The notes under the pieces are model-generated. The model did no database searches. It was not told the DNA's origin and saw only the letters and a list, made by a program, of their open reading frames with translations. 64,000 nt of DNA from Selaginella moellendorffii. Its lineage: Eukaryota > Plantae > Lycopodiophyta. The stretch's first letter is position 1, and each line of letters opens with the position of its first letter. This document shows positions 8,150-62,124 of this stretch, piece by piece. Made by a program: the position numbers and the translations under genes. Location of the stretch: NCBI RefSeq assembly GCF_000143415.4, contig NW_003314360.1:298435-362434 (forward strand), written 5' to 3'.

Positions 8150-8839
8150 TTTTTGCTATGCTTAAGCTTCAAGAATCTTGCAGCCTTACCAAAAGACGAG
8201 CTTTTCCAATTCGACCGACACCTTTACTTCCAACACTTCCATGTCTTTGACCTTGTTATCATCGTCAAACTCCACCCAGGGAACTCCAATGTCACTCGCG
8301 AAGTGCTGCGGTGCATACACTAATGCAGCTCCATGAACCCAGCGGTCTCACAGCTTCTGCTTGGAAAGCTTGACAACCTTTTCCAATGGAATGAAGTGAT
8401 TGAAATAGAGTAAAGCCCGAGTCGTGTTAAGTGGAATGCAGTCCTCAGGATTCCATTTGCCTCCAAGCAAGTGCTGCAAGTAGTCAAAGTACGAGTCGCA
8501 GGAATGCCGCTGTTCGTGCACACTCGTGCATTGCCACGAGAAGAATGATCCTAGCGACCAGCTCGCCCCTCTCCCGTTCTACAACGCAAACTTCTCTATA
8601 GCGGGACGCAGATATCTGTGATTGTGCATAAGCCGTGCCGCTGCCCCAACACGGCTCCACTGACACTTAATGTGATCATTCGTCATCGCACGTCGCCACG
8701 AAGCCTGCCACGAAACATGAGTCGGAGAACAGCTGCGGTCCGATAGAGGCCATGAACAAGGCAGCAGCCTGTTCCTGCGACAGCGCTTGCTGGGGAACGA
8801 TTTTCTTACGACAGCGATCAGCCAGCTTATACTTTGCGA
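8150..8839 (-). pseudogene. C-terminal half of a Crinkler-related NTPase + PD-(D/E)xK nuclease-like gene (gene X)
   Basis: Fragments across frames, in order: FAKYKL, SVEP, ERGELVARIILLVA, LYFNHFIPL, GAALVC, DIGVPW...LEVK. This is the motif series I recognise from fungal/lycophyte CR-NTPase-REase proteins. Frameshifts and stops are present. Confidence 0.6.
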
Positions 8840-9150
8840 ATCCCACGCTCTGCCCACAGAGAAAAGAATCCATACTTCTCGGATTACCACGGGAGTGAAC
8901 TTAACACAGGTTCCAGCTCCAACGTCGTCAAGACAAACAAAGCCCACATGGTGATTTTCATAGTTCCCAAGCTCTTGGATTTGTGCTTTATGAGAGAAGA
9001 GTTTCTGGTTTCAGTCGAGAAGCTGGAAATCAGGTACGCGAGAAAGGCCTGCTGGCTGCTCGAGTGTAAATGGAAGGAACTGCCACCATTAGGATGAGTC
9101 GCCGTTCATGCTTAGGATTGCTGTGAAGCATGATAGACTTTGAACATTGC
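8840..9150 (-). pseudogene. N-terminal part of a paralogue of the orphan membrane protein at 15996-17537 (gene Y), inside an inversion
   Basis: Near-identical nucleotide and peptide match (FTAILSMNGDSS; GFVCLDDVGAGTCVKFTPVVIR; KYGFFSLW) to 17070-17445, with deletions. Confidence 0.9.
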
Positions 9151-9399
9151 CCTCGTGAACTGGGATCAATGTACCTGTTATCACAACGAGAAGGGATTCC
9201 CCTTTGTCCTGATATCTGCCCAACTAATTTGGATTTTGCTTCTAAGTATTCAGAAGATGAAACTCGGTCAGCTTCGCCATGCACGATGGATCGAAAATGA
9301 TGGATTGGTGGGGTACTGAAGATTTGCCTCACGGAAACTTTGATGTCAAGTTATTGTGCAATTCGCAGTTCGATCAATCCTTTTCATAGCTCAAAGTAT

Positions 9400-10150
9400 C
9401 AGGTACGAAGGCTGCCCGCTGAGACGGCTGCATTGTGCCAGATCCCATGAGGGCCTATCGTGTTGTGCCACGGCTCGATCAGCCAGTGATCTCGGAGAAA
9501 ATCGATGGTGTGTGGATTGGAAGCAAGCGTTTCTCGGCCATGACAAGTTATCTGCTCTCTAAACTTGATGCTTACACCGCAGCTTGGGGCAGAACGGTTC
9601 AAGTTTCAAGGACCCTTTGCCCGGAGCAGTGGCTGGGGGAAATCGTTCATGGTGTGCAGCCTGCGCAACTCTGGCGTGTTTGTGATTTACTGTTCCTTCA
9701 TGCGTGAAGGTTCCACCGGGTATCCACCGAGGTCCGCTCTAGCTCCGTGTATTGAGGGCGTGGTGACGGCATTGCGCATCTGATCGCTCGCGAGCTGGCT
9801 GCGTCCAGGTTGACAGCCGTTGAATGGTGCGAGCAGCAACTCTTGTTCTCGGAAATCCACAAGTCCATACTGGAAGGTTTCATAGGAAGGATGATCTTGG
9901 TAGTTTCCAGTGTTTCGAAGGGCACCGGGTCTTATGCCAACCGGCGCTTAAAAGCTCAAGCAACTCGGCCTCGAGAGTTATCAGCCACTGACCACCTCGA
10001 GAGCTAGATACGCGCGGTGGCACCTAGAGATGTCTTCAGCAAGGTTTCACCATGGTCTTAAGGTAAACTCGACGTTACTGAGCACGAGAACCTGTTCAAG
10101 CATAGGAAGCTGTTGACATCCAAGCTTACTGGAGACATGAAAGTGGAGAT
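9400..10150 (+). pseudogene. N-terminal P-loop NTPase half of gene X, inside the inversion
   Basis: GPFARSSGWGKSFMVCSL...VFVIYCSF...STGYPPRS (Walker A plus the GYPPR motif) at ~9610-9740. Frameshifted. Walker B region apparently deleted. Confidence 0.65.
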
Positions 10151-11110
10151 ACTGAGCAACACTGTTGGATCCACAGTGTTGACCCTTCCCAACTGGAACA
10201 TGCACATCCAGAAGTCAAGTGGGATGACTTTGAGAAGCATCGATCTCAATCACGCTAATGCGATCAGCAAAGGCATGGAGCTGGGGAAGGTTTGGACCCA
10301 TCGACGACTTTCATAGTCAAGACAGCTCCGGAAGCAGCAGGATTCGACATGTCCGAGTGCGAGTCGACCACGGAGAAAGCTTTGCCTGCTTGGAGCTCCT
10401 CAAGCAACAATTCGATTTCCTCATCTGTTGACTTGAGGACCACCGCTACTTTCGTCGACGTTCTGGGATCGTTCATGTCTCACGTCAAGAACTCTTACAT
10501 TCAAGCGCGGAACTCAGCCCTGGATCTCCATCATCCGGCCTCAGATTTCTGGGTGGCAGCAGTGGCTCTTCCCAGTGCTGTGGTGGGAACAGCCGTGCCT
10601 TTCATCAATCTCCAGATCAAGCTCTTCAAGAACTTGACAAGTTTTCAGCAATGGAAGACGATGATGCTGTGTGTGAGCAATTATATTCTCTCGGTAGCAT
10701 CTTACTCTGCTGTGCTTGCTATGATCCCCGCCGAGATTCAGAAGGCAGAGAGGAAGTTTGCGACCTGGGGACTGCTCGCTGACCAAGTTCCAATCACAAG
10801 GCAAGGGCTCAAGTTCTTGTTGTTGTCAAGGCTGAGTCGGTCTATAAATCCGGCAGCCTCATATTGGCATGGTCCTCCACTGTGATCCATGTTCCACTAG
10901 TCGCGTGCATAACATTCTATAGATGCAAGCAAGTATTCTCCAGGAGGTGGCTTCTTAAGGTAACGAGCACGCTGGAAGACGAACAGCTCCTTGATCTTTA
11001 AGCCAGCTCGGTGGAGCAGCAGCGGCTGGAGAGGAAGCTCGAGGCAGTCAAAAGTTCAGAAAGAAGGGACAACCAGCTACAGAAGATGAGAACTTACAAA
11101 TCACTCTCGT
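10151..11110 (+). pseudogene. C-terminal part of the gene Y paralogue
   Basis: LSNTVGSTVLTLPNWNMHI...HPASDFWVAAVALPSA...EQQRLERKLEAV...KSLS is collinear with the C-terminal two thirds of the 513-aa ORF. Several frameshifts. Confidence 0.9.
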
Positions 11111-11322
11111 TGACCGGGTTGGACTCTATTTGCTGCTTTGAGTCTTGGTCCTTCCCTTCATTTATCTCCAGAAAGCTCGTGCATTTCTTTCTTCAATTTT
11201 CTCTCCAGAAAAGAGTACGGCGCGCGAACAGTGGAACACATCCCTCCCATATATGCCCGTGCATATTAGTCGATATCACTCCGGAGATTGATAGGCTGCT
11301 TGTTAGCCTTGGGGGTGGCCAT

Positions 11323-11690
11323 TGCTGTGAAGCATACAAACAAGTATTTTCTATACGATTGTATAGCCGAGCTGACTGGCTGGACGTTACTTATCGTGTA
11401 TAAAAAACTATGTGAAGGCCAAAAACTCTACGAAGATAAGAACACACGTAAGTGCTAGATCGCCAAGAAGAAATGTCAAGCCCCGAACGGATTTCCATCC
11501 AGAAGTGGACAATATTACAGTCGCTGCCCAGTGGTGGACCGTGAGCGAGGACGACAATCACCGATCAAACAAAGGGGATAATTTTTCAGTTTAAGAAACT
11601 GGAAACTGGAAATGCTGCGAGCTGTCGGCTCATGGCTGCCTCGCTCTCTCCCTCGCGGAAACAGTGACACCATCTCTAGCCACGACTGTT
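11323..11690. repeat. Duplicated copy of the GULLO 5' UTR/promoter region (6146-~6600)
   Basis: Shared collinear blocks in the same orientation: gaagcatacaaacaagta, tagccgagctga, actctacg.agataagaacac, ggatttccatccagaag, caatcaccgatcaaacaaa.ggg. Confidence 0.8.
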
Positions 11691-11901
11691 ACTAAACCAT
11701 GTAATTTTTTTTATCCCAGAAGATATACCAGCCCAAATATTCTTCTGTTGGCATATTTGCTAGGATAGATGCTTATATTCTAGTGATGATGCGTTAAAGC
11801 TAGTGGTGCCAGCACATTGCAGAGCTATCGAAATTCTGGACAACATTCTTCACAAGTGTCGTCTCTTTGAGATCTTACTTTCCTTCTTCTTCCTTCTCGA
11901 C

Positions 11902-12939
11902 ATGTCTAAGTTGTACCAAGCATTGGCGTCGGCCACCACCGTGAGTTTTAGATCTTGTAGCAGCGGGAGCCAGCACGATGAGACAGCGTCCTCTCTGTTT
12001 CTCAACAGGATTGTGGACGAGTTCTTGGAAGAGGAGGCCGATGGCGGCAGCATCGATCATCAAGACCACACTGTTGCCGCTGGAGAGAATCACCATGAGG
12101 ATCACTCAAATGCGGATCCGGAGGAGTTGAAACTGCCGGAGCTAGAAAATTTACTCGTCAAACAGGTGCGTGCATGCTTCTTTCTTCCAACTTTACCTTT
12201 ACAAGAAGTCTGGTTTGTGTCCAGAATGATGGTGAGATCGAGCTGCTGGCTGCGGATGCTCGACGATCGAGAGATCAAGCCGCAAAATTGAATCTCCAGG
12301 GAGCAGCTTTGCAAAGAAGCGTGATGAGCAAACTCCGGGGCATGGGATACAATGCCGCTGTTTGCAAGTCGAGATGGAAGGCAACAAGAACCATTCCTGA
12401 AGGTCACAAACCTCTGCGAACTTGTAGAGATTATTGTGTTTATATATGCATATGATCTTCCAGGGCACTACAGTTTCATCGATGTTCTTCTCCATCCCAG
12501 AAAACGAGTGTTCATCGATACGGAGTTTAGCATGCAGTTCGTGATTGCTCGGCCAAGCCAAAGCTACGCCGCCACATTGAGCAAAGTCCCTCGACTTTTT
12601 ATTGGCACCTCGGAAACACTCCATCGCTTGATCCTTCTCACATCCAGAGCGATGAAGCAGTCGCTCAAGAGCCAAGGCCTGGCAATACCTCCATGGAGGC
12701 AAGAAGATTATCTCAAAGCGAAGTGGTTCTCCACTTACCGGCGAACTACAAATCCTAAGTTTGCTGCCCAAGAACATATGCATGAGTTTCCTGATTTTGA
12801 GCAGTTCATGGCAGTGTCGACTAAGATCAGGAAACCATCAGGGTCTCCTCGGAGATCTGGACTATCAGCTCTAGCCGCTGCTGGTTTGATCCATCACGAG
12901 GATGAAAAGTCTCGCCACCACCTTGTTGCAGTTGTATAA
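11902..12939 (+). CDS. Plant DUF506 (PDDEXK-like) protein
   Basis: Exons 11902-12165, 12225-12402 and 12464-12939 with GT-AG introns. Motifs LRGMGYNAAVCKSRW, GHYSFIDV, FVIARPS..Y and IPPWRQEDYLKAKW. Confidence 0.88.
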
Positions 12940-17920: not shown

Positions 17921-18335
17921 ATGAAGGTAGCCCGGCCTTGTCTCCTGAGCATCGCTCTGGATATGAGAAGGATCTGTTTCCGAGGTTCGAACAACTTCAT
18001 GGCCGAGGACTCATTTTGTATCGCAATGCTGCATTTGTGTCGATCGTTACAGGCTCTGCCGCGCGATTTTGCTCGAGACCGACATCGAAGTACGAAGGAC
18101 AAGAACTTCTCAAGATCGGCGACATACAACACATTTGGAATCTACAATTACAAGGTTCGTCGCAATGATTTCTCTTTTAGAAAAAATTCACGAAGTTCTT
18201 CCTTCCATTCTTTTCGTTTTTGACGATGAAACGAATCCAGGCAGTGCTCGTAGGACAAGTCCGTTCGAAAAATCCTCGGTGATGGAAGAGCTCTCAGATC
18301 CAGTGGCACAAGGTTGCTGTCTACCCGAGAAATGA
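17921..18335 (+). pseudogene. Possible decayed NTPase-family fragment divergent from gene Y
   Basis: Short motifs RICFR and ILFVFDDE (Walker B-like) in broken frames. Weak support, and the region runs into an assembly gap. Confidence 0.3.
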
Positions 18336-18414
18336 GTAAAGGATAAGGGAAAATCAATTCTCATGAAACGATTCCTGATATTCGCTGAAAATCCTCACCC
18401 CTCCACGCGAGCCA

Positions 18415-31218: not shown

Positions 31219-32700
31219 ATGGAAATCGATCCAAGAGAGGAAACCCGGAAGCTTTCGAGGAGGCGAAACGAGGACGAAGAAGAGTATAAAAAGCTTGCCA
31301 ATAAAGTTAGGGTTCAAGCTAGGGCTCTGAAATGGCGAGCGCTCTGGACCGTGGCACTCGTCCGTGGCTGCCCGTTCTGCATCAAGCTCAAGGTGTCACC
31401 GATTCGCGTAAGTTCCTTCTCCCATACAAGAGGATCAGGCAGCAGCAGCGAAGTATCTCACTCGAGAAAGAAGAACTGAAAGAAGAGAGAGGCGAGCTTT
31501 TGGCTCTGGCGCTGGCGCGCTCCCCTCGGTGGTTTCCAGTCTTCGACGAGATGGTTCCGTCCATGGAGGAGCTTACGCATGCCCAGGAGAGGCTGCAACT
31601 CCAGCAGCCAAAGGACTTCTCGCGACGAGCGATTGCTCTAGGGGATTTGCTGCTGCTCCAAGGCAGCTTTGACGAGGCTGAGGCGAGCTTCCAGAGGGCG
31701 ATATCTTCCGCGGCTACTGCTGGCGATCGAGACGAGGAGAATCGCGTCACAGCTCAGGTGAAGCTTGGGATGCTGCTCGAGAACTTGGGTCGGCTGGACG
31801 AGGCGGAGTTCCAGCTTAAGCAAGCGTCTTCTACTGGCGCCACTATCACTGGTGTTACTCACTATGGGGCTCTCAAGTTCCTCCAGCTCTTTCTCTTCGA
31901 CCATGGCACTGCCTCAGCGTACCGTGATCTCTCTGCAAGCATCGATGGTTGCTGGGAGTTTCGAAAGTGGTGGAGCGCTGCGTCGACTGGCCATCCACTC
32001 TACGAGTCTCCCTATGGATTTGTCGACGACTTGAGCTTTGCATGGTTTGGACGGCTCAGGCTAGGCCTCGTGCACAAGCTCGTCACCAAGAAGCTCAAGC
32101 TGGCCAACCAGAACTTGTTCGTAGCTCACACATCACACAGGACGCATTCGCTGCTGGCTGTGCATCTCCGACGAGTTGGGGAAGTCCGGGATCATTGGTT
32201 TAAGTTGGTGTCGCTGGATGGAGTTCCTGTGGAGTCTCCGGAGAAGCACAGCAAGTATTGGACTGAAGAAGACGATAGACGGCTCTTAGAACGCGTCGCT
32301 TTCCAAGATCCAAAGAGTGTCCTGTCGCACCGCCTTGTGTGCAAAACACCACTTTGGGAGCTCTAGCTTGGACGGAGCAAGACCCAGACAGCAAAGTGAA
32401 GCCTTGCTGACAAGGTACGCAAATACGGAAGGAACTGCTCGGGGATAAAAGAACACTGCAGCACAGGAAGAGGTTTCTTATATCAGACGCAGGCCTTGAT
32501 ACATGCAGAAACGTATGGACATTCTTCCCGCAAGAGCTCTAAAAGGAGCCATGATCAATCAAAGCCTGAAGGTGGTTCCAGGTTTCTGATCCATCCATGG
32601 AGGAGCTTCAGTACGCCCACCTCCAGTGAAAGAAACAGCCTGCTCCAAAGATCTGGGAGGACACAACAGCACAATGAAGCCTCAATCTATTGACAAGGTA
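31219..32700 (+). pseudogene. TPR-containing gene family, copy 2 (longest; 344-aa ORF at 31332-32366)
   Basis: Coiled-coil N-terminus and two TPR motifs. The upstream ATG at 31219 is out of frame with the 31332 ORF, and homology to the other copies continues past the stop, suggesting frameshifts. Confidence 0.65.
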
Positions 32701-34574: not shown

Positions 34575-35500
34575 CGGTTTTGGACGGCTTAGGCTGGGTC
34601 TTGTCCACAAGCTCGTCACCAAGAAGATCAAGCTGGCCAACCAGAACTTGTTCGTAGCTCACACATCAGACACGACGCATTCGCTCCTGGCTTTGCATCT
34701 CCAACGAGTTGGGGAAGTCCGGGATCATTTATTTAAGTTGCTGTTGGTGGATGGAGTTCGTGGAGAAGCACAGCAAGTCTTGGACTGAAGAAGACGATAG
34801 ACGGCTCTTAGAACGCTTTGCTCCAAAGAGTATCATGTTGTGTGCGTTGGAAGCTCTATACATTTGCGAGAAGCAGCAAAGTGAAGCCTGGTATGACACC
34901 GACAAGGTAAAGGCTGCTTTGTTAAAAGAATTTATGCTGGATCCCTCCCAATCTTCCTCAGAAACTTAAAAATGGTGAAGAGCTCTGGACCAGCCGATAG
35001 GGGAAGGAGATATCAGCAAAGGTTTGGTTTCTACAAAGTTTCCTTGTTTCTGTTTTGATTTTGCTTCTCGTTGTTTTGTAGTTTAAAACTGCTCGGGGTT
35101 AAAGAACACTGCCCGTCTCTCACAGGAAGAGGCACGATTTTCTCTTATATCCAGGATCACTGGTCGACTGCTCATATACTGCTCATATGTAGACACACGG
35201 AAGGTACGGATCTTCTTCCCGCAAGAGCTCTAGAAGGAGTTTTATTCTCGTAGACATGTCTCCGCCACGCCGCAGGTGTTGAGCTCGACTAAGCGCAGTA
35301 GAGACAGGTTTCTTTCATTCTTTAGATCTTTCCTTATCCCCAATTTTCTTCTATTTTGTGTATCCAATGCTTATTCGCACAGAAGACAAGGTACAAACTC
35401 CTCAAATGAGTCTGATTGATGTCAGATCGCCACATCGTTATGCATCGGATCAAACAGCCGAGGCACCGATAAGCTCGCCTCAAGTTTTGGTACTGGCCAG
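34575..35500 (+). pseudogene. TPR gene family, copy 3 (3' part only)
   Basis: FGRLRLGLVHKLVTKKIKLANQNLFVAHTS...WTEEDDRRLLER matches 32045-32300. 35195-35300 and 35470-35490 match 30345-30490. Confidence 0.8.
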
Positions 35501-35958
35501 TTTAATGTTAGCAGATCAATCAAAGCTCACTACGCCCAGGAGAAGCTCTATCTCCATCCAAATAAAGGACTTGCTGCTCCAAGAAGACGACAGCCTTGTA
35601 ACAACAGCCTTGTATGAGCCCTAGAAGAGACTCCCAGATCTTTCGGGAACTTGGAACCGATCTTTTGCTTGATCATCGTCGACCGGTTGAAACAGAGAAA
35701 TGCTCTTGCTGGGTCACTTCTCAGAAATCAATTCTCGTTCTTCTCCTTCCTCTTCCAACTGCAGGAGCTCCGAAACTTGTGCTGGATTTGGACGTCCGCT
35801 ACAGCGAAAGTGGTGAATAAAGCTCGACTCTAGAGAGATTCTAATTTTTAAAAGCACGCACGAATTTTTCCATTAGAGCCCTAAGTCTGCATTTTCTCAG
35901 CTAGCGAGATGTGGAGGTTGCTCGGTCTTGGAGCTGCGCTTTTCCTGCTAGGGAATCC

Positions 35959-37668
35959 ATGGATGTGGCTGCCGTTTTCTTCCCGCGCACCAGGATCACC
36001 GCCACCACCGAGCGACGTCGACGTTTTCTCCCACGGTGCGTATCTCCACAAGAGGATAGTGGAGTCCCCTCTCTATTGGCGGGCTTTGCTTCGTGTTTGG
36101 TCTCCCTCTTTGCAGCGGCTGCATTCTTACGGTTTTGTATCGTTGATCTCGGGGACGGATCCGGCACAGCGACAGTGAAAGGGTTTAGTCCCGTGCTTGT
36201 ACTCATCTTTATGTGGATGGTCAGCACGGCTTCACTCGTGGAGAAATGGATCCTTGACGACAACGCTAGAGGCAGGTTGGCGGCATACACATGCGCTTTC
36301 TCTGGGATTTTCCTGCTGGCGTCCGCCATGCTCGTCGTGCCATACTTACAGGAGCGTGATAGGAGAGTGTGGACAGCCATTTACTCAGTGACTACAGTTA
36401 TGGCGTGGCCGTCATTTGCGCTTCTCCGGAAGTCCCCAGAATTCTACCGGGTCACTGCCACAGCTGTCACATACGGGATGGCTCAGGTGGCACCGCTTGC
36501 TGTTCGTGGGTATTACAAGCTTCCATTCCCATGGAAGACGTCTTTTGCTTCTTATTCTCTTCTCTCCTTAGTTTCTTCGATTCTATGGGCGATCTACTCT
36601 GGAGTTGTGGAGAGATACATGGTACATATGGTTGGAGCTGCCCTGAGCATTGCTGTGAATGTTCTCTACCTCGCCTTCTACGTCAAGAAGCTGGTTGACT
36701 TTTTTGATTTGTTCCACGGTCTTTTGTTTTCTGCTCAAGTAGTTATATTTCGTATTTGGTAGTGAACTTTGTCCTTTAAATACATATATTAATAGAGTAT
36801 ATAGTTTTAGGTAAGTTCAGGTGATGGAGATCACAACGATGAGGCCGTTGTGGTGGTACTATTGTGTTGTTTCGTGCTTGGTGACTTTTGCATGCCATTT
36901 GTATTTCTACACGACCTATTTCACACTTGCTTCTCCAAAATTAATTTCTGCTCGTTGCCCTCGCCCAAGCTGTCATTCTATTGATTGTTACCGCTGGAAC
37001 TTCCACTATCTGAACAATTTTGAAGTTGGCGTCCAGTATTCTGCTATTAGATACTGGCATCTTGCATGCTTCACTCACACTTTATATGTTTTGCTGGCTC
37101 TTGGCTCTTTAACAGGAGGTAAAGCCCTTGAATTTTTTAATTTTATTTTCTTTCTTTAACTTTTCTTCATTCAGTTGTCATTGGAGTTCTTGCTTATTTC
37201 CATCATAAGTGGTGCATGCTGATCAGCTTTATTGTCGGAGCTATTAGTGCCACATTGATTCCTCTTGCACCACATTCCTCATTGTTCGTTGTATTGCAAG
37301 TTTTGTCAGCAATGGCACACTTTTGTGCGGGAATGACATCAATTTGCAGACTTGTTGAAGAGACTCCAGCACCTGGCTTCATTTATTTGAAAAGTCAGTA
37401 CGTACCAGGTTATAAGCCCAACGGGAATTTTGATCTAGATGGGGATGAAGCTTGCACAATAATGTCAGTATTAGGTATCATACCACTTACGGCATCCTGT
37501 TTCATCTCTTTGGTATACTTCCTCGTCCCAGCATATCGTTTTTATCCAGATTGGAAGTGGGGAAACAGGGCAGTAGCCTTGGTTGATGTTGTCTTGATAC
37601 TAGTGCTTGTAGCAGAAATGATAGCACTAGTTGATAAGTACATAATTAGAAGAGTTAATCATTCTTAG
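35959..37668 (+). CDS. Multi-pass membrane protein: divergent SWEET/MtN3-like N-terminal part joined to an OCT/MFS-like half transporter
   Basis: Predicted exons 35959-36693, 36821-37118 and 37175-37668 join in frame (~509 aa). Exon 1 has ~7 TM with SWEET-like spacing (KGFSPV; APL...LPFP...SILWAIYS...G.AL...LYLAFY). Exons 2-3 have C..W.F...S.I..W.L.C then LGSLTG.V.G.LA and LIPLAP....F..LQ, resembling plant organic cation transporter TM1-6. The first donor (GTTGAC) is weak. Confidence 0.6.
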
Positions 37669-50674: not shown

Positions 50675-53600
50675 TGTCAGGAATCCCCCAATTCTTGCCA
50701 CATTCCTAACTCTCACCGGATTCCTGACCTACAGACCACATTCCTGACTCTCGAGACACTTCCCTATTCCTAACTCTCGAGACACTTCCCTATTCCCGAC
50801 TCTCTGATTCCTGAGTCTCGAGCCACATTCCTGATGATGATGTGGCACCTCCTCGACCTCAGCTATATTTAGTCCGTCCTCGATCCAAGAGTGATGGAGC
50901 TTCATCAACCTATAGTATATATAAGTTAGCCTTGTTCCATTTCTCCACAATCTGAATCAACGCCAGTCTAAGGCTTCTTCTTTGTTTTCACTTGCTTTTC
51001 TCTTTGTCTTTTGCATTTTCCAGTCTTGATCTTGTTGGGGGTCTTGACAGTTTGATTTAGATTGTGCTTTTTGCTTTTGCTTTAGCTCGTTTCGATTGTT
51101 TGATTGCCTTTGTCTTTTTCCTCCTTTTTTTCTTTCTTCTTGTTGATAGAGTCTCCAAGCCATCCTGATTTCTTTGCTGAAGTCCTTGCAAAAATCCAAT
51201 CTGAGAATACCAAGCTGAAGGCAACCCTTCTTCGCATGCAGCAGGAGCTTGCTTCACTTTCGGTTCAAGGATCCAGCAAAGTTCTTGAACCGAAGGTGAG
51301 TTTCCCGGCGAAATTTTCAGGCAAGCGTTCGGAGCTTCACGGATTTTTGAACTAAATGGAGCTGATCTTTGCACTTCAACATTGGCGGTACCCCACTTCC
51401 GAGTCTCAAATCAGCGCGATTGGGACGTTGCTCGAAGGTGCAACTTTGTCATGGTTTTTTCCTCTATTGGAGAAGAGCATGAAAGGGGTCGTGGTTTCGG
51501 AGGTGATGGATCTTCAATTGTTCAAAGAGAAGCTCGAAGCATGTTTTGGCGAGACGGATCGGGTTTGGGCTGCTACCACAAAGATGGGACGTCTCTCTCA
51601 GTGGTCTCATCCTGCCTCGATCTACGCTGCAGAATTCCAACTCCTTGCTTTGGACACTCAGTGGGATGAGTGGGCCCTGATTGACCAATTTCATTTTGGC
51701 CTCAACAATGGTGTCAAGGATTTATTGCTCACCATGGAGGATCCCAAGGACCTGTCGGACGCCATCAACAAAGCTATTCGATGTGACAATCGTCTCTTTG
51801 AATGTCGTCAGGAAAGTCGCCGCGCCTCTATTTTTCCGTTCCAAACTCAGGAATCCCAGCTTGAGTCTTTGGGGCATACTCCTGAACCTACTGCTCTAGT
51901 CCCAATGGATATTTCTGGTACTCCCCGACTCATTAGAGGGAAGTTGAGTCCTGCTGAGAAGCAACATCGAATATCTCATAATCTTTGCCTCTACTGTGTT
52001 GATCCTAATCACAAAGCAGCTGTGTGTCCCAAGAAGCCTCCCCGACTGCTCGAGTTCACTCTGCCTCAAAGTCCACCTCTGTTGCAGTCGGGAAACAACA
52101 CTGTCCAAATAAAGTAGGAGTTGTCTATTTGGACTCCCTGAATAAAAATCACTTTTTTTCTTTATTAAGCTCCTCACCACCTTTCATCAAAGCCACCACC
52201 AATTCCCGCAACTTCCGTGTCCCATGTCTCCTTTCTTTCATCGGACAATTAGGACTCAAGGCTCTGGCGCTACTGGACTCAAGTGCAACTTCCTGCTTCA
52301 TGGACACGGACTTTGCTGCCCGACATCACATTCCTCTTTCTCCTACCATATGGGATCTAAGGGTTGAAGGCATCAGCGGGCATTTTGTGTCTCCATCTTC
52401 TGGACTTAGGGAAACATTGCCCATTCGAGTACACATCAGGTCCACCATCACCGATATCGCCTTCAACATCATCAACAGCAAGTCCTCCTCTGTGGTGCTC
52501 GGTCTTCTTTGGTTCCAACTACATCAGCCTCAGATCTGTTGGAAGGAATTACAGCTCATCTCTCCCACATCACCATCTCCCACGGCTTCCCTTGCTATTC
52601 ATCGAGTCCGAATCAGGAAAAGTTCTCTAAACTCAAATCGGGGTTCTGTTCCTGACTCTACGAAGTTTTCACCCTCTTTTTTTTCCTCTCTTCCATCTTA
52701 CACTGGACAATATCCTCGTTTCATCATTCCATTTAGTCGTACACCTCCTCTTATCTCCACAATCATTATGAAAGAACTCCTTCATGAAGAATCTATTTTC
52801 CTTTTTGCTTTACATGTTTTTCCTGTCAGTCTTCCTGAGAAGTATCATGATTTTGGGGATGTGTTTGAGAAGTAAAAAGCTAGTGTATGCTTTATTTCGT
52901 TAAAGTGGAACTTATTCAGTAAAGTGGGACATTAATTAGCATGTGTCCACATGCCATTTCCTAATACTTAATTAATATTTATTAATATTTCTATCAGTTT
53001 TTTAATTTATTTTTTATATTTCACAATATTATAACACAAAATCATATGAAAAGTTTTTAATTTATAAATTATAAAGCTAAAACTTCAATTTTTTATTGTT
53101 GTTATAAAAATGGCATGTGGCCACACACCATAAGTGGGATAATGAAAAGTTCCACTTTAACGAAATAAAGCATGTATACTACCTGTTCATTGGCCTTATG
53201 ACTATCCCATTGATTTACAGGAAGGAGCGTCACCTCTGTGGGGGCCTATCTACGGGTTATCCCCGTCCGAGCTTAAGGCCCTCAAAGAGCACGTAGATGA
53301 GAACCTTGTCTCGGGGTACATTTAACATTCGCAATCCCCGGTTGGAGCACCTGTCTTCTTTGTCAAGAAGAAGGATGGGAGTTTGTGGCTAGTCATTGAT
53401 TACCAAGGTTTGAACAAGGTGACTGTTCGGAACCGTTATCCGCTGCCCTTGATCTCGGACTTGTTGGAACGCCTTGGTGGTGCCCGCTTCTTCACCAAGA
53501 TCAACCTCCGTGGAGCATACAACCTGATCTGGATCCGGCCTGGTGATGAATGGAAAACTGCGTTCCGAACCCACTATGGCCACTTCGAGTACACTGTTAT

Positions 53601-56060
53601 GCCATTTGGCTTAACAAATGCTCCAGCAGTTTTCCAACACATGGCAAACAACGTCTTTCGGGAGTTTCTTGATCAAATGGTGATTGTCTACCTCGATGAC
53701 ATCCTCATTTACTCAAAAACTCAAGAAGAGCACGACGAACATGTACGAAAGGTACTGGTGAAGCTGCAAGAACACAACATATATGCGAAGCTTGAGAAAT
53801 GTTCCTTCGATCAGCAGTCTGTGGAGTTCCTTGGGTACATTGTCACTCTTGAGGGTATCATGATGGATTCTGCCAAAGTCAAGACTATTTTCGAGTGGGA
53901 GCCTCCACAATCAATGTCGGACGTTCAGGTTTTCCTTGACTTCGCCAACTTCTACCGCAAATTCATTGATCACTACTCTAACATTGTCCTTCCTCTCATG
54001 CATTTCACTTGCAAGAATGTTCCCTTCTCTTGGTCTGCTGTTGCCCAGCAGGCCTTTGACACACTCAAGGCGGCCTTCAGTTCAGCTCCCGTTTTGATCC
54101 ATGCTGATTCCTCACAACCTTTCTTCATCGAGGCTGACGCCTCTGACTTTGCCATCGGTGCTTTGCTGTCTCAACTCGAAGCGGATCAAGAACTTCATCT
54201 GGTCGCTTTCCATTCTTGGAAATTCCAGCCTACGGAGATCAATTACGAAATCCACGACAAGGAGCTCCTTGCCATCATGGATTCCTTTGGAGAGTGGCGC
54301 CGTTTCTTGGAGGGGGCGGGCCATCAAACAACAATCTAGACGGTTCACAAAAATCTCGAGTACTTTGCCACTTCCCGAGTTTTAAGCTGTCATCAAGCAA
54401 GGTGGGCACAATTCCTGAGTTAGTTTGACTTTGTTATCAAGTACAAACCTGGAAAGCTTCAAGGCCTTCCTGATGCTCTTTCAAGGCGCTCCTATCTCAG
54501 TCTCAAGCCTGGTAATCCTACCTTTGATCAACAGGATCAAGTTATCCTCGGTCCTGATTGGCTTCAAGTTATGGCAATTTCTCTGGCCCATCAGGACTCC
54601 TCCTTGATGGATGCGATTAGAAACGATCTTCAATCCGATGATCTCACCAGCGACATTTTCCCCATTTTTAGGCTTTTCACCCAGTGACTCCCGACTGCTG
54701 GCGATTTGACGAGTTTGAGTTCTTAGATGGCTTATTGTACCGTGGGGAGTAGCTTTACGTTCCTAAAGGTGATGCTCGAAGGTTGGTCCTGATGGCGTGC
54801 CACGATAGCCCGATTATTGGTCACTTCGGCATTGCGAAAACCTATGAGCTAGTTGCACGGGACTTTTGGTGGCCTCACATGGACGACTACATCAAAGCTT
54901 TTGTTACCTCCTGTGACACTTGCACCCGGAATAAAGTACCTCCCCACCTTCCTTCAGGTTTGCTCCGTTCCCTTTTGGTCCCTTTAGGTCCTTGGGAATC
55001 CATCTCCATGGATTTCTTGAGTGATTTTCCGAGTTCTGGAGGCTTCAACAGCATTTTAGTCATGGTGGATCGCTTCACAAAGATGGCGCACTTCTTGCCA
55101 TGTACCAAGGAGTTTTCGGGTGAGGACATGGCAAAAGTGGTATTCAGGGAAATTTTTCGACTTCATGGGATTCCTACAGATGTGGTTTTGGATCGGGGGC
55201 CTCAGTTCATCTCTCATTTCTAGCAACGGTTTTTGCAGCTGCTTGGAGTGAAGGTCAACCTCTCTTCGGCGTATCATCCTCAAACTGATGGACAGTCCGA
55301 GCGAACGATTCAGATGTTGGAACAATTCTTGAGGTGCTTCATCAACTATCATCAAGATAACTGGTTCGATATCCTTCCCCTTGCTGAGTTCTCCTATAAC
55401 AACTCTGTTCACTCCTCTCTTCAAATTTCCCCCTTCTTTGCAAACTCTGGCCGAAATCCCCGATTCAATCTCTCACTTCCTTCTCCATCCAAATCCTCTC
55501 GTTCAAATCCCCGCTCTGTGGCATTTGTCTCCAACCTCTAGGAAATCCACAACTCCATCTCCTTCCACCTCCATCGTGCTCAGGAATCTCACAAAACATT
55601 TGCCAATGTCCATCATCAGGATTGTCCCCCTTACAATATTGGGGATAAAATCTGGCTCCTTAGGCGAAATATCTCCACCACCAAGCCCTGTCCAAAACTT
55701 GATTTCAAACGCCTCGGTCCTTTCCCTATCACTGCCATCATTAACCCTGTCACTTATCGCCTTGCACTTCCCTCCTCATATCAAATTCACCCCATTTTTC
55801 ACTCCTCTCTCCTTGAGCCTTATATTCTCAGTCCTATTCCCAATTGGGTCATTCCTCCGCCTCCACCAGTGCAGCTTGAGGATGGGTCTGAGTACGAGGT
55901 TTAGGACATCCTTGATTCCAAGATTTCATGGTCTAAACTCTACTATCTAGTCGACTGGAAGGGTTATAGACTTGAGGAACGCACTTGGGAACCTGCGGAC
56001 AACCTGATTCATTCTCCTGACCTTGTTCAGGACTTCCACTGCTGCTATCCTTCTCGTCCG
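50675..56060 (+). mobile_element. Element E: Tcn1/Tf1-like chromovirus, 3' LTR missing
   Basis: 5' LTR 50675-51049 (TGTCAGGA...TCTTGACA). gag EPKVSFPAKFSG...CLYC..NH...C, GGGAAAC frameshift site 52090-52096, protease ALLDSSA, RT VYLDDILIYS, RNase H EADASDFAIG, integrase SAYHPQTDGQSER, GPF, and chromodomain YLVDWKGY...TWEP. Scattered stops. Confidence 0.92.
52887..53173. mobile_element. MITE (~290 bp) related to the Sola-like transposon at 57848+
   Basis: 27-bp perfect TIR atgctttatttcgttaaagtggaactt / aagttccactttaacgaaataaagcat, AT-rich interior and subterminal ggcatgtg.ccaca motifs. It interrupts pol of element E at a TA-containing site. TSD length is ambiguous. Confidence 0.9.
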
Positions 56061-59055: not shown

Positions 59056-62000
59056 TTAATGAATCTCACCTTGAACCCGAGTTATGAATGCTCTTGCTGC
59101 ATCTCTTGCATGGTCTGGCAAGGTGATGGTGGCACTCTGCTTCCGCATCCAACCATGCACAACATTATCCACCGATATGCTCATGCTGGGATCCCTTGGA
59201 TTCAGCACCCATCTCTTTTCTAGGCAATCCTTCGTATATCCGGAACTTGGCTTGAACCACTCCACAGTTACATTGAAGGAGTTAGTTTCTGCGTCCTCCT
59301 CTGCATCAGTGATGCAGCGCCCCACCCATATCATTTGTTTTTTATTACTGGGTCTGACAAGCACGACCATTCCTTTGCAGACCTGTACTGGATTGAATGC
59401 TGAATCCGGCTTCTTGTTCCTTGGCCCACAATAGTGATCCTCAACATCGTTATCTGTCACTGCATTTCCAGAGGACATTGTTCCGCTACTATCTGGTGCT
59501 CTGGGTTCTGGCCAAAAGGACTCTTCCAATTCTTCATATACAACCGGCCCATTTTGGATAGCAGATATAATCTTCTCCCAGTATTCGAGAAAAGGCTTGC
59601 ACCTCTGAAAATAGGATTCTCCACCAAACACCAACCCCCTCTTCCAGAAGGCAATATGCTGTCTAATCCCGGCCACTATACTTTCCTGGTCTTTGAGTCC
59701 ATCCGGGTGCATCGGCCGTGGGGAACCCTGAGGAATCATAGGTTCCCCAGTTATGGGATCTCTCTTGAAGAGTTCAATGCCGTCCACTGGCAGCCACACT
59801 GTGTCCCATTCTCTCATCTTGTACCTCATCACTGGAGCACCGTCACACATGCTGAAATGAAACTGAAGAGGCTTGGAGTGGCCAATCAGCGTTTCGGATC
59901 CATCCCTGATGTAGCCTCTTACAAACCCCTTAAAGTCTGGAACCTCTGTCAGAAGTGCAGCTTCAACAGTGCCTTTGATGCAATTTTGGAATTCATCGTA
60001 GAGTTGTGGGAGGGTGAGGACATTGGATCGCCGGAGGGACTCTGCCAGGTGACTGAACATGGCATCGACGTCTTCATGAGTGTGCCCAACCATGAGAAAG
60101 CCAAGTGTAACCGTTTCAAATATGCCTTTGGCAACAAGCATCGCCAAGTACGCGAAGACGTACATGTTTTTGTTCTCACTGCCAGCATTGTCTGTTTGGA
60201 GCAGAAGATGGGGTGGAAGGCCACATCGGCCGCAAGAACTTCCTTGAGATTCTGCTTCGTTTGGATGAGGCTGTGCATTCACCGGGCGACCAGCCTCGTC
60301 GGAATGGCATGAGGCCTCACGTGATAACCCTACAATCTGACGGCCAACATATTCACTGGGATGGCATGGGGCCCCACGCGATACTGCAAGCCTTTGCTCC
60401 TCCTCCAGCTGAACCCTGTATGGGGTTCGATCGACAAGGGCCTTATGCAAGGGTTGGCCGTTCAGCTCAGTCTGCGCACTTTGCAGAGACCTTAAGTGTT
60501 TTGCTAGGGACGCAATCATCATGTTTGCACCCCCGCCACCCCATAGAGGTACAAAGAAGTTCCCATAGTTCTGGGCACCATGCCCATGAGCGATTATGCC
60601 AAACAGAGACACAGGCAGCTGCATGGATGAAGAGATTGCCTTGGGGGCAGGATTGAGTCGAGGTAAGCACGTCTTTTTCTGGTCCATTTTGTCGTGGATG
60701 ATGCAGAGGTAAGAGTCAGGTCTCTCCATGGAGAGAATCCTGTTATGATAATATGCAGTCCTACAGCTTCTCTGCTCGATGTTGTGGTCGAGCCGCCTTC
60801 TAACCAACGTCTCTCGCTCTTGAGCGCTGCAAGAATTCTTCGACAAAGCCATTTTGATAGCAGTGCACTCGTCACACTTTGAAAAGCTGGAGTACTTTCC
60901 TATACTCACATCCCTGAACCTGTTGCTCCACAATCTACTAAATCTAGATTGGCTCAGCTTCCTGTAGCCATTACTCTGGAGTTCCCGATTCACATCTTCC
61001 AATATGGCCCCCTTGGTATACATGGAAGGGAGAACTCGTTGGGTGTCTCGTGTTCCATCTTCCAAGAGGCGGGTTTTATGTGGTTGCTGCTCGCTACATG
61101 TCTCGACAAACCTCTTGAAGATTGCCTCTCCATATACAACATGACCCCTGGTTTTGTGCGTACCGTCGTTCCCATGGACTGCCTGTTGAACCCTTTGTTC
61201 CTCGAACTCAGTTTTGATTCTGTAGAATGTGCTTCGAGGGACTCCATAAATGATTCTCCATGCCTTCATGCAGACCAAACCCCTCTGGAAGACCATGCCC
61301 CCCACCTGATGTTCTGAAGCATCAACAGATGACCGTAATGCCTCATACACAAAATTGCGAGCTGCCTTCCAGGACAATGTCTTGTATCTTGCTCTCTCCT
61401 CTTCAATAGCATCCCAATCAGCATGTTGACAGCACCTCCTCTTGCAACAAGCAACTGTCGAGACCATTCGAACCTCCATCGCCATTTTCTGCCTTTTCGG
61501 TTCGTTGCTCAGATCCCTTTGGCTGCGCTTTAGGAAGGTGTACTTTCTTTTCCCATGAAGAGATGTTCTGTCATCAGTTGTAGTGGTGTTTGATTGTGAA
61601 TCCTTCATATTCTCAAACACTAAGTGCCTCAATTTCCACCGCACAATGCTTCCAATAGTCAGACTGTTTTCTTCTGTGTCAACAACCTCTAAAATCGCAA
61701 CTCCAATATCATCCCAGCCCAATTCTTGATTAGCAACCGCATCTCTTGGATCGACAACTGTGGCTAAGCCCTCAGCTACCACCTCCCCCTCGGGGTTGTT
61801 TAGAAACACTTTTGCCTGAATCCATGTAGCACGGTTCTTAAGATCCACGGAGGGAACATGCGTCGCACTTGCGCTGTCCCCAACATCTGCTTTCTTCTGA
61901 AGATTTTTCAAGGCAACAACAACATTTACCCCGACGACCATCTCTCCTCGTTCAATAGCGACCACATTCCCATCGAAGACAGTCTCTACTGATACAGCAG

Positions 62001-62124
62001 CATTGCCTTCCCCAAGCCTTTGACAGTGTATAACAAAGTTCCGATCCATAGACACAAGGGTCCCTTTTGCAACTCTCTTCCCACCATTCAAAATGTAAAC
62101 CTTTTCCCCAACCCTGAAGGCCAT
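59056..62124 (-). CDS. DDD transposase, Sola-like, 1022-aa open ORF
   Basis: Motifs CCKRRCC, VCMKAW..IYGV...TF, FSKCDEC, CIIHDKMDQ, LLLQTDNAGSENKN and FLMVGHTHEDVDAMFS (catalytic core). A small terminal exon (to stop 58983) after a GT-AG intron 59069-59019 is possible, as is an upstream exon. Confidence 0.8.
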   Translation of the reverse strand: MAFRVGEKVYILNGGKRVAKGTLVSMDRNFVIHCQRLGEGNAAVSVETVFDGNVVAIERGEMVVGVNVVVALKNLQKKADVGDSASATHVPSVDLKNRATWIQAKVFLNNPEGEVVAEGLATVVDPRDAVANQELGWDDIGVAILEVVDTEENSLTIGSIVRWKLRHLVFENMKDSQSNTTTTDDRTSLHGKRKYTFLKRSQRDLSNEPKRQKMAMEVRMVSTVACCKRRCCQHADWDAIEEERARYKTLSWKAARNFVYEALRSSVDASEHQVGGMVFQRGLVCMKAWRIIYGVPRSTFYRIKTEFEEQRVQQAVHGNDGTHKTRGHVVYGEAIFKRFVETCSEQQPHKTRLLEDGTRDTQRVLPSMYTKGAILEDVNRELQSNGYRKLSQSRFSRLWSNRFRDVSIGKYSSFSKCDECTAIKMALSKNSCSAQERETLVRRRLDHNIEQRSCRTAYYHNRILSMERPDSYLCIIHDKMDQKKTCLPRLNPAPKAISSSMQLPVSLFGIIAHGHGAQNYGNFFVPLWGGGGANMMIASLAKHLRSLQSAQTELNGQPLHKALVDRTPYRVQLEEEQRLAVSRGAPCHPSEYVGRQIVGLSREASCHSDEAGRPVNAQPHPNEAESQGSSCGRCGLPPHLLLQTDNAGSENKNMYVFAYLAMLVAKGIFETVTLGFLMVGHTHEDVDAMFSHLAESLRRSNVLTLPQLYDEFQNCIKGTVEAALLTEVPDFKGFVRGYIRDGSETLIGHSKPLQFHFSMCDGAPVMRYKMREWDTVWLPVDGIELFKRDPITGEPMIPQGSPRPMHPDGLKDQESIVAGIRQHIAFWKRGLVFGGESYFQRCKPFLEYWEKIISAIQNGPVVYEELEESFWPEPRAPDSSGTMSSGNAVTDNDVEDHYCGPRNKKPDSAFNPVQVCKGMVVLVRPSNKKQMIWVGRCITDAEEDAETNSFNVTVEWFKPSSGYTKDCLEKRWVLNPRDPSMSISVDNVVHGWMRKQSATITLPDHARDAARAFITRVQGEIH

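What the first reader, a model, noticed from the sequence alone, without database searches (positions are those of the whole stretch)
35959..37668. Putative chimeric transporter: SWEET-like 7-TM unit fused to half of an OCT/MFS carrier
Seen: three exons splice in frame into a stop-free ~509-aa protein with ~12-13 hydrophobic segments. Knowledge: exon 1 follows the MtN3/SWEET repeat pattern but lacks the conserved substrate-binding Asn residues. Exons 2-3 follow the N-terminal half of plant organic cation transporters (W.L.C loop) but lack the D..GRK motif A. Inference: a fusion of two unrelated transporter folds, both degenerate at functional motifs, perhaps a sensor or scaffold. I know of no described SWEET-MFS fusion.
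Basis: partly seen in the sequence, partly recalled or inferred. Interest (0 to 1): 0.7.

Follow-up and report, generated by a model that had tools for sequence, protein, structure and literature searches.

The report
Two neighbouring Selaginella membrane genes, not fusion
The supposed SWEET–MFS "chimeric transporter" of Selaginella moellendorffii is most likely two adjacent small membrane-protein genes, a 7-helix orphan and a 6-helix "half" of an organic-cation-type carrier; they have been duplicated together as a pair, and no evidence found here joins them into one protein.

Summary
The window is Selaginella moellendorffii. The open frames, the GT/AG sites and the 13 hydrophobic segments are real, and GenBank already holds fused ab initio models for both haplotypes (SELMODRAFT_428178 and 425052).

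The fusion is not supported:
- Exons 2-3 form a complete gene family (B, 6 TM, about 260 aa). A stand-alone paralogue annotated by RefSeq (LOC112342084, 253 aa) starts at an ATG homologous to window ATG 36824 and shares the phase-1 intron. dN/dS against it is 0.25.
- Exon 1 belongs to another Selaginella-only family (A, signal-like segment plus 7 TM) whose ORFs end in a stop just after TM7.
- A followed by B on the same strand recurs at two further old paralogous loci, with gaps of 59 to about 2270 nt. Each B has its own ATG and a TATA-like box.
- No read joins the exons. The only contigs cover A alone.

B resembles the N-terminal half of SLC22/OCT carriers on weak but concordant evidence. A resembles SWEET only in sub-threshold fold and language-model hits.

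Interest is modest: an unproven fusion, but a real co-duplicated pair of orphan membrane genes that includes a natural half-MFS.

The parts
35909..36079 (+). Ancestral N-terminal coding frame of gene A (MWRLLGLGAALFLL... signal/anchor-like segment, then the conserved 'D.DVF.H.A' and 'YW' before TM1). In this haplotype it is disconnected from the rest of A.
   Evidence: The other haplotype, L001, reads straight through from this ATG. The frame is conserved in paralogues L003, L004 and L005 (tblastn). The X1 contig starts at 35884 and carries the L001 state.
36080..36081 (+). 1-nt deletion relative to the other haplotype (T present in L001 and in the X1 contig). It frameshifts gene A in the window allele.
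35959..36693 (+). It is an open frame of 245 codons. Only 36082-36693 (TM1-TM7 of gene A) is the conserved frame. Codons 1 to about 40 are an out-of-frame reading of the ancestral N-terminus.
36694..36762 (+). Unconserved C-terminal tail of the gene A ORF up to stop TAG 36760-62.
   Evidence: The ORF 35911-36762 is listed. Paralogue ORFs also stop just after TM7 plus basic residues. Two of the three haplotype differences in 36694-36820 fall in this tail (36706, 36740).
36763..36823 (+).
36824..37118 (+). Gene B exon 1. ATG 36824 (MEITTMRPLWW...), TM1, a Cys-rich loop, the 'YSAIRYWHLACF' motif and the start of TM2. Donor GAG|GTAAAG.
   Evidence: It aligns from the first residues to stand-alone P0003 and to the L003 and L004 B copies. 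dN/dS is 0.12.
37119..37174 (+). A 56-nt phase-1 intron of gene B, conserved in position in all paralogues.
37175..37668 (+). Gene B exon 2. TM2 end to TM6, 'FHHKW' in place of MFS motif A, 'DWKWGN', and stop TAG 37666-68.

Best explanation
The stretch holds two adjacent, same-strand protein-coding genes of Selaginella moellendorffii rather than one chimeric gene.

Gene A (ATG 35909, 7-TM core 36082-36693, stop 36762) encodes an N-terminal signal/anchor-like segment plus seven helices. Its small family was found only in this species. Its fold may be a very divergent SWEET/PQ-loop type. In the window's haplotype it is frameshifted by a 1-nt deletion and is probably a null or N-terminally altered allele.

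Gene B (ATG 36824, one 56-nt intron, stop 37668) encodes about 262 aa with six helices. It is a stand-alone, motif-A-less copy of the N-terminal domain of an SLC22/OCT-type MFS carrier and is kept under purifying selection.

A and B were duplicated together as a cassette; A followed by B recurs at two other old paralogous loci. One B copy lives alone and is the only family member with a RefSeq model.

Inferred mechanism, not shown: B assembles as a parallel homodimer, or with another membrane partner that could be A, to rebuild a 12-helix MFS-like carrier or a non-transporting derivative. A and B are made as separate polypeptides.

For: Species and existing models:
- Exon 1 is 100% identical to SELMODRAFT_428178, a 416-aa fused ab initio model.
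- The other haplotype carries a differently spliced fused model of 430 aa. Both models skip the conserved first ~70 aa of B, so they are guesses.

B is a gene of its own:
- P0003/XP_024519092 (253 aa) and its allele P0008 cover exactly exons 2-3. Their Met aligns with ATG 36824 and they share the same intron.
- dN/dS between window B and P0003 is 0.25 at dS 0.9.
- Between haplotypes B shows 3 nonsynonymous and 5 synonymous changes plus an in-frame indel.
- Every B copy starts with ATG and has a TATA-like box 35-65 nt upstream. The L002 copy has patatin and U2 snRNA genes upstream and no A.

A is a gene of its own:
- An exhaustive phmmer search of 1.84 billion representatives found only Selaginella paralogues, P0004 and P0006/7. 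Their 7-TM region is not followed by B within the protein.
- A ORFs stop right after TM7: L004 '...FFRKK*', L003 and the window.

Cassette: intact B copies lie 880 and about 2270 nt downstream of A in L004 and L003.

Reads:
- No joints were found.
- The X1 contigs cover 35884-36119 and 36271-36655 only, nothing of B. Four runs of that study hold the same 25-28% of words.

B is MFS-like.

A frameshift.
Against: - The junction was never covered by RNA reads. Three RNA runs, each about 12% sampled, gave 0 reads on the gene. X1 is only guessed to be RNA, and its contigs stop at 36655, before the junction.
- Only 59 nt lie between the stop of A and the ATG of B. That leaves almost no room for a 3' end and a promoter, and an in-frame GT...AG pair exists in both haplotypes.
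- Topology would allow a fusion: a 7-TM unit ending in the cytosol, followed by an MFS N-terminus that starts in the cytosol.
- A followed by B on one strand is kept at three old paralogous loci.
- Cassette B copies have much lower GC3 (0.31-0.45) than A (0.57-0.59) or the solo B (0.55-0.60). This could fit B lying in the 3' part of an A-initiated transcription unit.
- RefSeq has no separate model for A or B at this locus, so independent expression of B here is not shown.
- TATA-like boxes are easily found in AT-rich DNA.
Confidence: 0.65

Rival explanations
1. A and B are spliced in frame (36693 to 36821) into one protein of about 510-525 aa with 13-14 TM helices: a 7-TM unit fused to a 6-TM MFS half. 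The A-B cassettes at the other loci are the same gene with longer introns, and the solo B is a partial duplicate that gained its own promoter.
For: - An in-frame GT/AG pair is present in both haplotypes.
- The gap is only 59 nt.
- A followed by B on one strand recurs at three loci.
- GC3 drops from A to B in all cassettes, while the solo B is GC3-rich.
- JGI's predictor also fused them.
- The membrane topology is compatible.
Against: - There is no junction read, and the contigs cover A only.
- The donor GTTGAC is weak, and the acceptor lies only 3 nt before the conserved ATG, with an in-frame TAA two codons further upstream.
- In L004, A ends in a stop directly after '...FFRKK' with no donor in place. 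In L003 the good donor after TM7 leads to another exon in the GenBank model, not to B.
- An ATG is conserved at the N-terminus of all B copies, and similarity is lost upstream of it.
- B works alone at L002/L006.
- No fused protein from any other source exists in 5.8 billion clusters.
Confidence: 0.17
2. At this locus the pair is decaying. A is a frameshifted pseudogene allele and B is an unexpressed relic. The open frames persist only because the damage is recent. No functional product, fused or separate, is made from the window haplotype.
For: - There is a 1-nt deletion in A.
- The haplotype differences in A are 4 nonsynonymous and 0 synonymous.
- There were zero reads on the gene in three RNA runs.
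- RefSeq has no model here.
- B here has low GC3.
Against: - B shows 3 nonsynonymous and 5 synonymous haplotype differences and an in-frame (6-nt) indel. Its omega against P0003 is 0.25, and it has intact splice sites and an intact ORF in both haplotypes.
- A is intact in the other haplotype, and contigs of a probable RNA study hold it.
- The contrast of 4:0 against 3:5 is not significant (Fisher p = 0.08).
- The deletion could be an assembly error.
Confidence: 0.13

Closest known systems
GenBank models SELMODRAFT_428178 (EFJ, 416 aa) and SELMODRAFT_425052 (430 aa), 'hypothetical protein', S. moellendorffii
   Same: They are the same locus in its two haplotypes, and they also fuse the 7-TM part to the MFS-like part.
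   Different: They use other junctions, and the two haplotype models differ from each other. Both skip the conserved first ~70 residues of B. Model 428178 bridges the frameshift with an invented intron. Neither carries a domain annotation.
LOC112342084 / LOC112344448 (XP_024519092, XP_024525003; 253 aa), S. moellendorffii
   Same: They are paralogues of exons 2-3, about 51-57% identical. They have the same start, the same phase-1 intron, six TM helices and the same motifs: YSAIRYW.LACF, FH[HY][KR]WCML, QVLSAM.H.CA and DWK.GN.
   Different: They stand alone between patatin/U2 snRNA and PPR genes, with no A-type gene upstream. They have higher GC3 and a shorter TM4-TM5 loop.
SLC22 / plant organic cation transporters (OCT) and the Sugar_tr/MFS_1 families (PF00083, PF07690)
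   Same: - The order of elements matches: TM1, a Cys-containing outer loop, a '(E/R)(W/Y)W.L.C' box, then TM2-TM6.
- The best and only meaningful PDB profile hit is OCT2 residues 154-210 (E 0.006), with a second collinear stretch at the 'HWRW' box.
- Pfam MFS_1 matches weakly in 4 of 10 pieces.
- Language-model neighbours are 91/100 Sugar_tr/MFS.
   Different: - It has only six helices, with no C-domain.
- Motif A (G...D[RK].GR[RK]) is replaced throughout the family by 'FH[HY][KR]'.
- The outer loop is short, about 45 aa.
- Scores are far below the Pfam cut-offs.
- The family was found only in Selaginella.
SWEET / MtN3_slv (PF03083) and the PQ-loop clan (semiSWEET, cystinosin, MPDU1)
   Same: - It has seven helices in about 210 aa with short loops.
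- By eye, TM6-TM7 resemble the second SWEET bundle: 'LSL..S..W.IYS..VE' and 'VGA......(N/Q).(L/I)Y..(F/Y)..K'.
- The nearest language-model clusters are all SWEET/PQ-loop, score 0.85.
- The top Foldseek PDB hit is AtSWEET13, followed by OsSWEET2b.
- The best TM-score in the atlas shape search is a SWEET cluster, at 0.46.
   Different: - There is no Pfam hit at E <= 10 in any of the five members.
- There is no PDB profile hit.
- No repeat is detectable between TM1-3 and TM5-7.
- The binding-site Asn and the Pro of the 'PN' motif are absent.
- There is an extra N-terminal hydrophobic segment.
- All fold matches are below significance and rest on a low-confidence model. GPCRs and designed helical bundles score alike.
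Known SWEET fusions (extraSWEET and superSWEET, several SWEET units in one chain). This is from my own knowledge and was not checked here.
   Same: They show that 7-TM SWEET units can be concatenated into longer chains.
   Different: Those join SWEET units to SWEET units. A SWEET-MFS chimera is not among them, and this locus does not establish one.

Membership tests
SWEET (MtN3_slv, PF03083) | Two MtN3/saliva triple-helix-bundle repeats recognised by the family profile | tested here: not met
   hmmscan at E <= 10 gave no MtN3_slv or PQ-loop hit for exon 1, P0001, P0002 or any of the 5 family members. The family profile found no SWEET chain in the PDB.
SWEET (MtN3_slv, PF03083) | Internal 3+1+3 repeat (TM1-3 homologous to TM5-7) | tested here: not met
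   hhalign of the two halves of alignment A1 gave probability 0.1-0.2% and P 0.3-0.5. The alignment is shallow, so this is a weak negative.
SWEET (MtN3_slv, PF03083) | Seven TM helices with the SWEET fold | tested here: inconclusive
   There are 7 hydrophobic segments and 7 long helices in the model. AtSWEET13 is the top Foldseek hit, but at E 0.08 and TM 0.41 on a model with pLDDT 58 and pTM 0.51. VIA Z is 7.1 at rank 26 among generic helical bundles. An atlas SWEET cluster reaches TM 0.46.
SWEET (MtN3_slv, PF03083) | Conserved substrate-site Asn residues and the Pro/PN motifs | tested here: not met
   Read directly from alignment A1: 'H(M/I/L)(V/T)G' stands where SWEETs have 'PN.(L)G'. The position was assigned by eye, not through a significant alignment.
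Major facilitator superfamily (MFS_1 PF07690 / Sugar_tr PF00083), SLC22/OCT branch | Profile match at or above the curated cut-off | tested here: not met
   The best MFS_1 score is 18.4 bits, E about 1e-3, against a cut-off of 33.4. It matches 4 of 10 family pieces. There was no Sugar_tr hit.
Major facilitator superfamily (MFS_1 PF07690 / Sugar_tr PF00083), SLC22/OCT branch | Twelve helices in two homologous six-helix domains | tested here: not met
   There are only six hydrophobic segments, and the protein ends after TM6 in all five B copies.
Major facilitator superfamily (MFS_1 PF07690 / Sugar_tr PF00083), SLC22/OCT branch | Motif A between TM2 and TM3 (G-x-x-x-D-[RK]-x-G-R-[RK]) | tested here: not met
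   All B copies have '(A/T)(Y/L/R)F(H/Q)(H/Y)(K/R)' at that place. In the OCT2 alignment it lies opposite 'DRFGRK'.
Major facilitator superfamily (MFS_1 PF07690 / Sugar_tr PF00083), SLC22/OCT branch | Sequence homology to the N-domain (TM2-TM4 core, the SLC22 'EW.LVC' box, the 'WR' box before TM6) | tested here: met
   The family profile against the PDB has OCT2 as its best hit, E 0.0058, residues 154-210, plus a collinear weak stretch at 249-271. Exon 3 alone hits OCT1/OCT2 at E 0.5-3. Language-model neighbours score 0.93 and 91/100 are Sugar_tr/MFS. The significance is modest, so treat this as probable.
Single chimeric gene (domain fusion) | Transcript evidence joining the two parts in frame | tested here: inconclusive
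   No joints were found. There were 0 reads on the gene in 3 RNA runs, and the contigs of one run cover A only. The junction itself was never covered.
Single chimeric gene (domain fusion) | The fusion is conserved in paralogues or orthologues | tested here: not met
   B stands alone at L002/L006. At L003 and L004 the A ORFs end in stops and B lies 880-2270 nt away with its own ATG. The database holds no fused protein other than the two ab initio models.

The most novel reading that the evidence does not exclude
A and B are functionally coupled in one of two ways. Either they are spliced into one 13-14-helix chimera, or they are made from a conserved two-gene cassette and assemble into a hetero-oligomer of a SWEET/PQ-loop-like 7-TM unit with a natural six-helix half-MFS. 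Either would be a lycophyte-specific transporter architecture built from two unrelated folds. It would also be a living example of the six-helix MFS precursor working without its second half.
Probability: 0.2. Interest if true: 0.7.

Novelty: new variant of a known kind. Interest (0 to 1): 0.33.

Why it matters
If the fusion were real, it would be the first chimera of a SWEET-like unit with an MFS unit. The evidence instead points to an annotation artefact, and the two GenBank fused models should be split and their exons corrected.

What remains of interest:
- B is a stand-alone six-helix half of an SLC22-type MFS carrier that has lost motif A yet is kept under purifying selection in several copies. 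MFS carriers are thought to have arisen by duplication of a six-helix unit, so a natural half-size member could be used to test whether such halves dimerise and transport.
- Two membrane-protein families found only in Selaginella moellendorffii are inherited as a cassette through old duplications. This hints at a functional partnership.
- One haplotype carries a frameshifted allele of A.

Tried and rejected
Tried without a useful result:
- Pfam on each exon and on all family members gave nothing for A.
- phmmer and a family profile of A against the PDB gave only a chance TEN1 hit.
- A single-sequence AlphaFold model of exon 1 had pLDDT 50.6 and was unusable.
- A model from a five-row alignment had pLDDT 58. 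Foldseek, VIA and atlas searches with it gave only sub-threshold SWEET leads among GPCRs and designed bundles.
- The internal-repeat test of A was negative.
- RNA reads: three raw RNA runs gave 0 reads on the gene and there were no joints. No more reads could be laid, so the paralogous cassettes could not be tested.
- A word search with the A C-terminus plus tail, meant to catch transcript-derived fragments across the junction, found nothing.
- A literature search for the locus tags found nothing.
- The bacterial-type promoter and terminator scan is irrelevant for a plant.

Rejected readings:
- The open frames are chance. Paralogues exist and omega is 0.25.
- Exons 2-3 are a dead fragment of a full-length OCT gene. 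All five copies end at the same place after TM6 and are conserved.

Not done:
- All searches were exon by exon or used public proteins P0001-P0008.
- Complex prediction was not used. I do not claim binding, and the alignments are too shallow for a meaningful test.
Full report
**What is there**

The window is Selaginella moellendorffii.

I re-read the three exons.
- Exon 1 (35959-36693) is 245 open codons followed by GT.
- Exon 2 begins at 36821 after AG and ends at 37118 before GTAAAG.
- Exon 3 begins at 37175 after AG, in phase 1, and stops at 37666-68.

Hydropathy gives 7 + 2 + 4 = 13 hydrophobic segments. The described object is therefore in the sequence. GenBank already holds fused models for this locus, P0001 and its allele P0002 (430 aa). 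They use different junctions in the two haplotypes, and both skip the best-conserved first ~70 residues of the second part. That marks them as ab initio guesses.

**Exons 2-3 are a gene of their own (B)**

A region search with P0001 found P0003, which is XP_024519092 or LOC112342084 (253 aa). Its allele is P0008.
- P0003 covers exactly exons 2-3. 'MGGRVTTMRPLWW...' aligns with window 'MEITTMRPLWW...' starting at ATG 36824, and both end in '...VNH(C/S)'.
- It has the same phase-1 intron after '...SLTG-G'.
- At its locus (L002, allele L006) the upstream neighbours are patatin genes and a U2 snRNA gene. There is no A-like sequence.
- Counted exon by exon, dN/dS between window B and P0003 is 0.25 (dS 0.90, dN 0.23; exon 2 gives 0.12 and exon 3 gives 0.38).
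- Between the two haplotypes B has 3 nonsynonymous and 5 synonymous changes and an in-frame 6-nt indel.

B is therefore a real, constrained, six-helix protein of about 262 aa.

**Exon 1 belongs to a separate family (A)**

An exhaustive phmmer search of P0001 against 1.84 billion representatives gave five hits at E <= 0.001: P0001 itself, P0003, P0004 (SELMODRAFT_447409), P0006 (SELMODRAFT_425345) and P0005, a fibronectin-repeat protein that is spurious. P0007 (SELMODRAFT_425350) came from P0006's cluster. All real hits are from S. moellendorffii. P0004 and P0006 match only the 7-TM part. Both A and B therefore have no detectable relative outside this species in that library.

**A and B travel together**

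tblastn on the paralogous loci found an intact, unannotated B copy downstream of A on the same strand in two places.
- L003: A at 5757-6521, B at 8793-9089 plus 9134-9568.
- L004: A at 9000-9704, B at 10584-10898 plus 10949-11440.
- L003 also holds further A and B fragments in the same order.
- L005, a recent inverted duplicate near L004, is rearranged.

Protein identity between the window copies and these loci is about 26-35% for A and about 31-46% for B, so the pairing is old.

The details argue for two genes.
- The A ORFs stop immediately after TM7 plus basic residues. L004 reads '...FFRKK*', and the window runs 23 codons further to TAG 36760-62.
- The distance from the A stop to the B ATG is 59 nt in the window, about 880 nt in L004 and about 2270 nt in L003.
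- Every B copy begins with an ATG at the homologous N-terminus, and similarity is lost upstream of it.
- Every B copy has a TATA-like element 35-65 nt upstream: CTATAAATAG in L003, TATTTATAG in L004, CTATAAAC in L002 and TTTAAATA/TATATA in the window.
- In the window an in-frame TAA (36812-14) lies four codons before the ATG, so a fusion depends on the single AG at 36819-20 or one at 36814-15. The donor CTG|GTTGAC is weak.

**Reads**

Three raw RNA-seq runs of the species, each about 12% sampled, put no read on the gene and showed no joints. A few reads fell on the upstream gene.

The Logan contigs of run X1 cover 35884-36119 and 36271-36655 only. That is A from just upstream of ATG 35909, and nothing of B. 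Four runs of that study hold the same 25-28% of the stretch's words. If these are RNA, as their size suggests but the record does not say, A is transcribed without B. The junction itself was never covered, so this is only weak evidence.

A word search for transcript-derived fragments of the end of A found none.

**A frameshift in this haplotype**

The other haplotype (L001, 98.7% identical) and the X1 contig have a T that the window lacks at 36080/81. With it, the ORF runs from ATG 35909 (MWRLLGLGAALFLLGNPW..., signal-like) straight into TM1.

That frame is the conserved one. '..P.P.D.DVF.H.A..' and '..S..(Y/F)WLGF.S' recur in L003, L004 and L005 (tblastn E 6e-5). The window allele of A is probably null or N-terminally altered, unless the deletion is an assembly error.

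The haplotype differences in A are 4 nonsynonymous and 0 synonymous, against 3:5 in B (Fisher p = 0.08).

**What the two proteins resemble**

B:
- Pfam MFS_1 matches weakly (18 bits, E about 1e-3, cut-off 33; 4 of 10 pieces).
- A profile of the family has OCT2 (8et9) as its best PDB hit, E 0.0058, over TM2-TM4, with a collinear second stretch at the 'HWRW' box.
- Language-model neighbours score 0.93, and 91 of 100 are Sugar_tr/MFS clusters.
- The 'YSAIRYW.L.CF' box mirrors the SLC22 'EW.LVC' box. This comparison rests on my own knowledge of that motif.
- Motif A is replaced in all copies by 'FH(H/Y)(K/R)'.

I therefore accept 'N-terminal half of an OCT-type MFS carrier without motif A' as probable.

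A:
- There is no MtN3_slv or PQ-loop Pfam hit in any member, no PDB profile hit and no internal repeat.
- The only pointers to SWEET are sub-threshold. The nearest language-model clusters score 0.85. AtSWEET13 is the top Foldseek hit at E 0.08 and TM 0.41, on a model with pLDDT 58. An atlas SWEET cluster reaches TM 0.46. VIA ranks SWEET13 26th, at Z 7.1, among designed bundles.
- By eye, TM6-TM7 recall the second SWEET bundle.

This is a lead, not a membership.

**Verdict**

The most likely reading (about 0.65) is two adjacent genes inherited as a cassette, joined wrongly because the gap is tiny.

The true fusion keeps about 0.17. In its favour are the small gap, the conserved order, the compatible topology and an unexplained drop in GC3 from A (0.57-0.59) to cassette B (0.31-0.45), while the solo B has 0.55-0.60.

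Local decay of the window allele keeps about 0.13.

How B works is inferred, not shown. The likeliest mechanism is a parallel homodimer, or a complex with a partner such as A, that rebuilds an MFS-like 12-helix bundle.

Noticed in passing
L002:5625-5800 (-): A complete U2 spliceosomal RNA gene (Rfam RF00004, 126 bits) lies about 200 nt upstream of the stand-alone B paralogue LOC112342084, on the opposite strand.
   Followed up: yes
window 36082-37665; L003 and L004 cassettes; L002: GC3 steps sharply from about 0.57-0.59 in A to 0.31-0.45 in the B copy next to it, at all three cassettes. The solo B copy has GC3 0.55-0.60. This is unexplained. It could be a 5'-to-3' gradient within one transcription unit, or weak expression of the cassette B copies.
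   Followed up: partly
L003:8793-9568 and L004:10584-11440: These are intact two-exon B-family genes with no gene model in the GenBank annotation. L003 also holds further B fragments (about 944-1141, 10395-10749) and an A fragment (9699-9803). L004 holds a partial second B (11744-12086).
   Followed up: partly
L005 (GL377638.1, about 27 kb from L004): This is a recent, rearranged duplicate of the L004 cassette. B lies on the minus strand (4848-5701, 99-100% identical), A on the plus strand (11094-12404, 95%), and another A on the minus strand (18122-18403, 77%).
   Followed up: partly
L003:3700-4610 vs L004:4230-5040 and L004:13270-13890 (inverted): A repeat of about 0.9 kb is shared at roughly 75-90% translated identity and is present in inverted copies. 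It overlaps the start of GenBank model P0004 and the first exons of P0006. It is probably a transposable element swallowed by those models.
   Followed up: no
window 34751-35624 (+): This is an upstream gene; the other haplotype has a 186-aa GenBank model there. The only RNA-seq reads laid in the region fell here (35111-35554, run X7).
   Followed up: no
window 59056-62124 (-), 53383-54339 (+), 5160-6464 (-), 31332-32366 (+): Other long ORFs in the window: a 1022-aa ORF with DUF7869 (E 6e-42), a retrotransposon RT plus RNase H ORF, a FAD_binding_4 ORF, and a TPR-repeat ORF.
   Followed up: no
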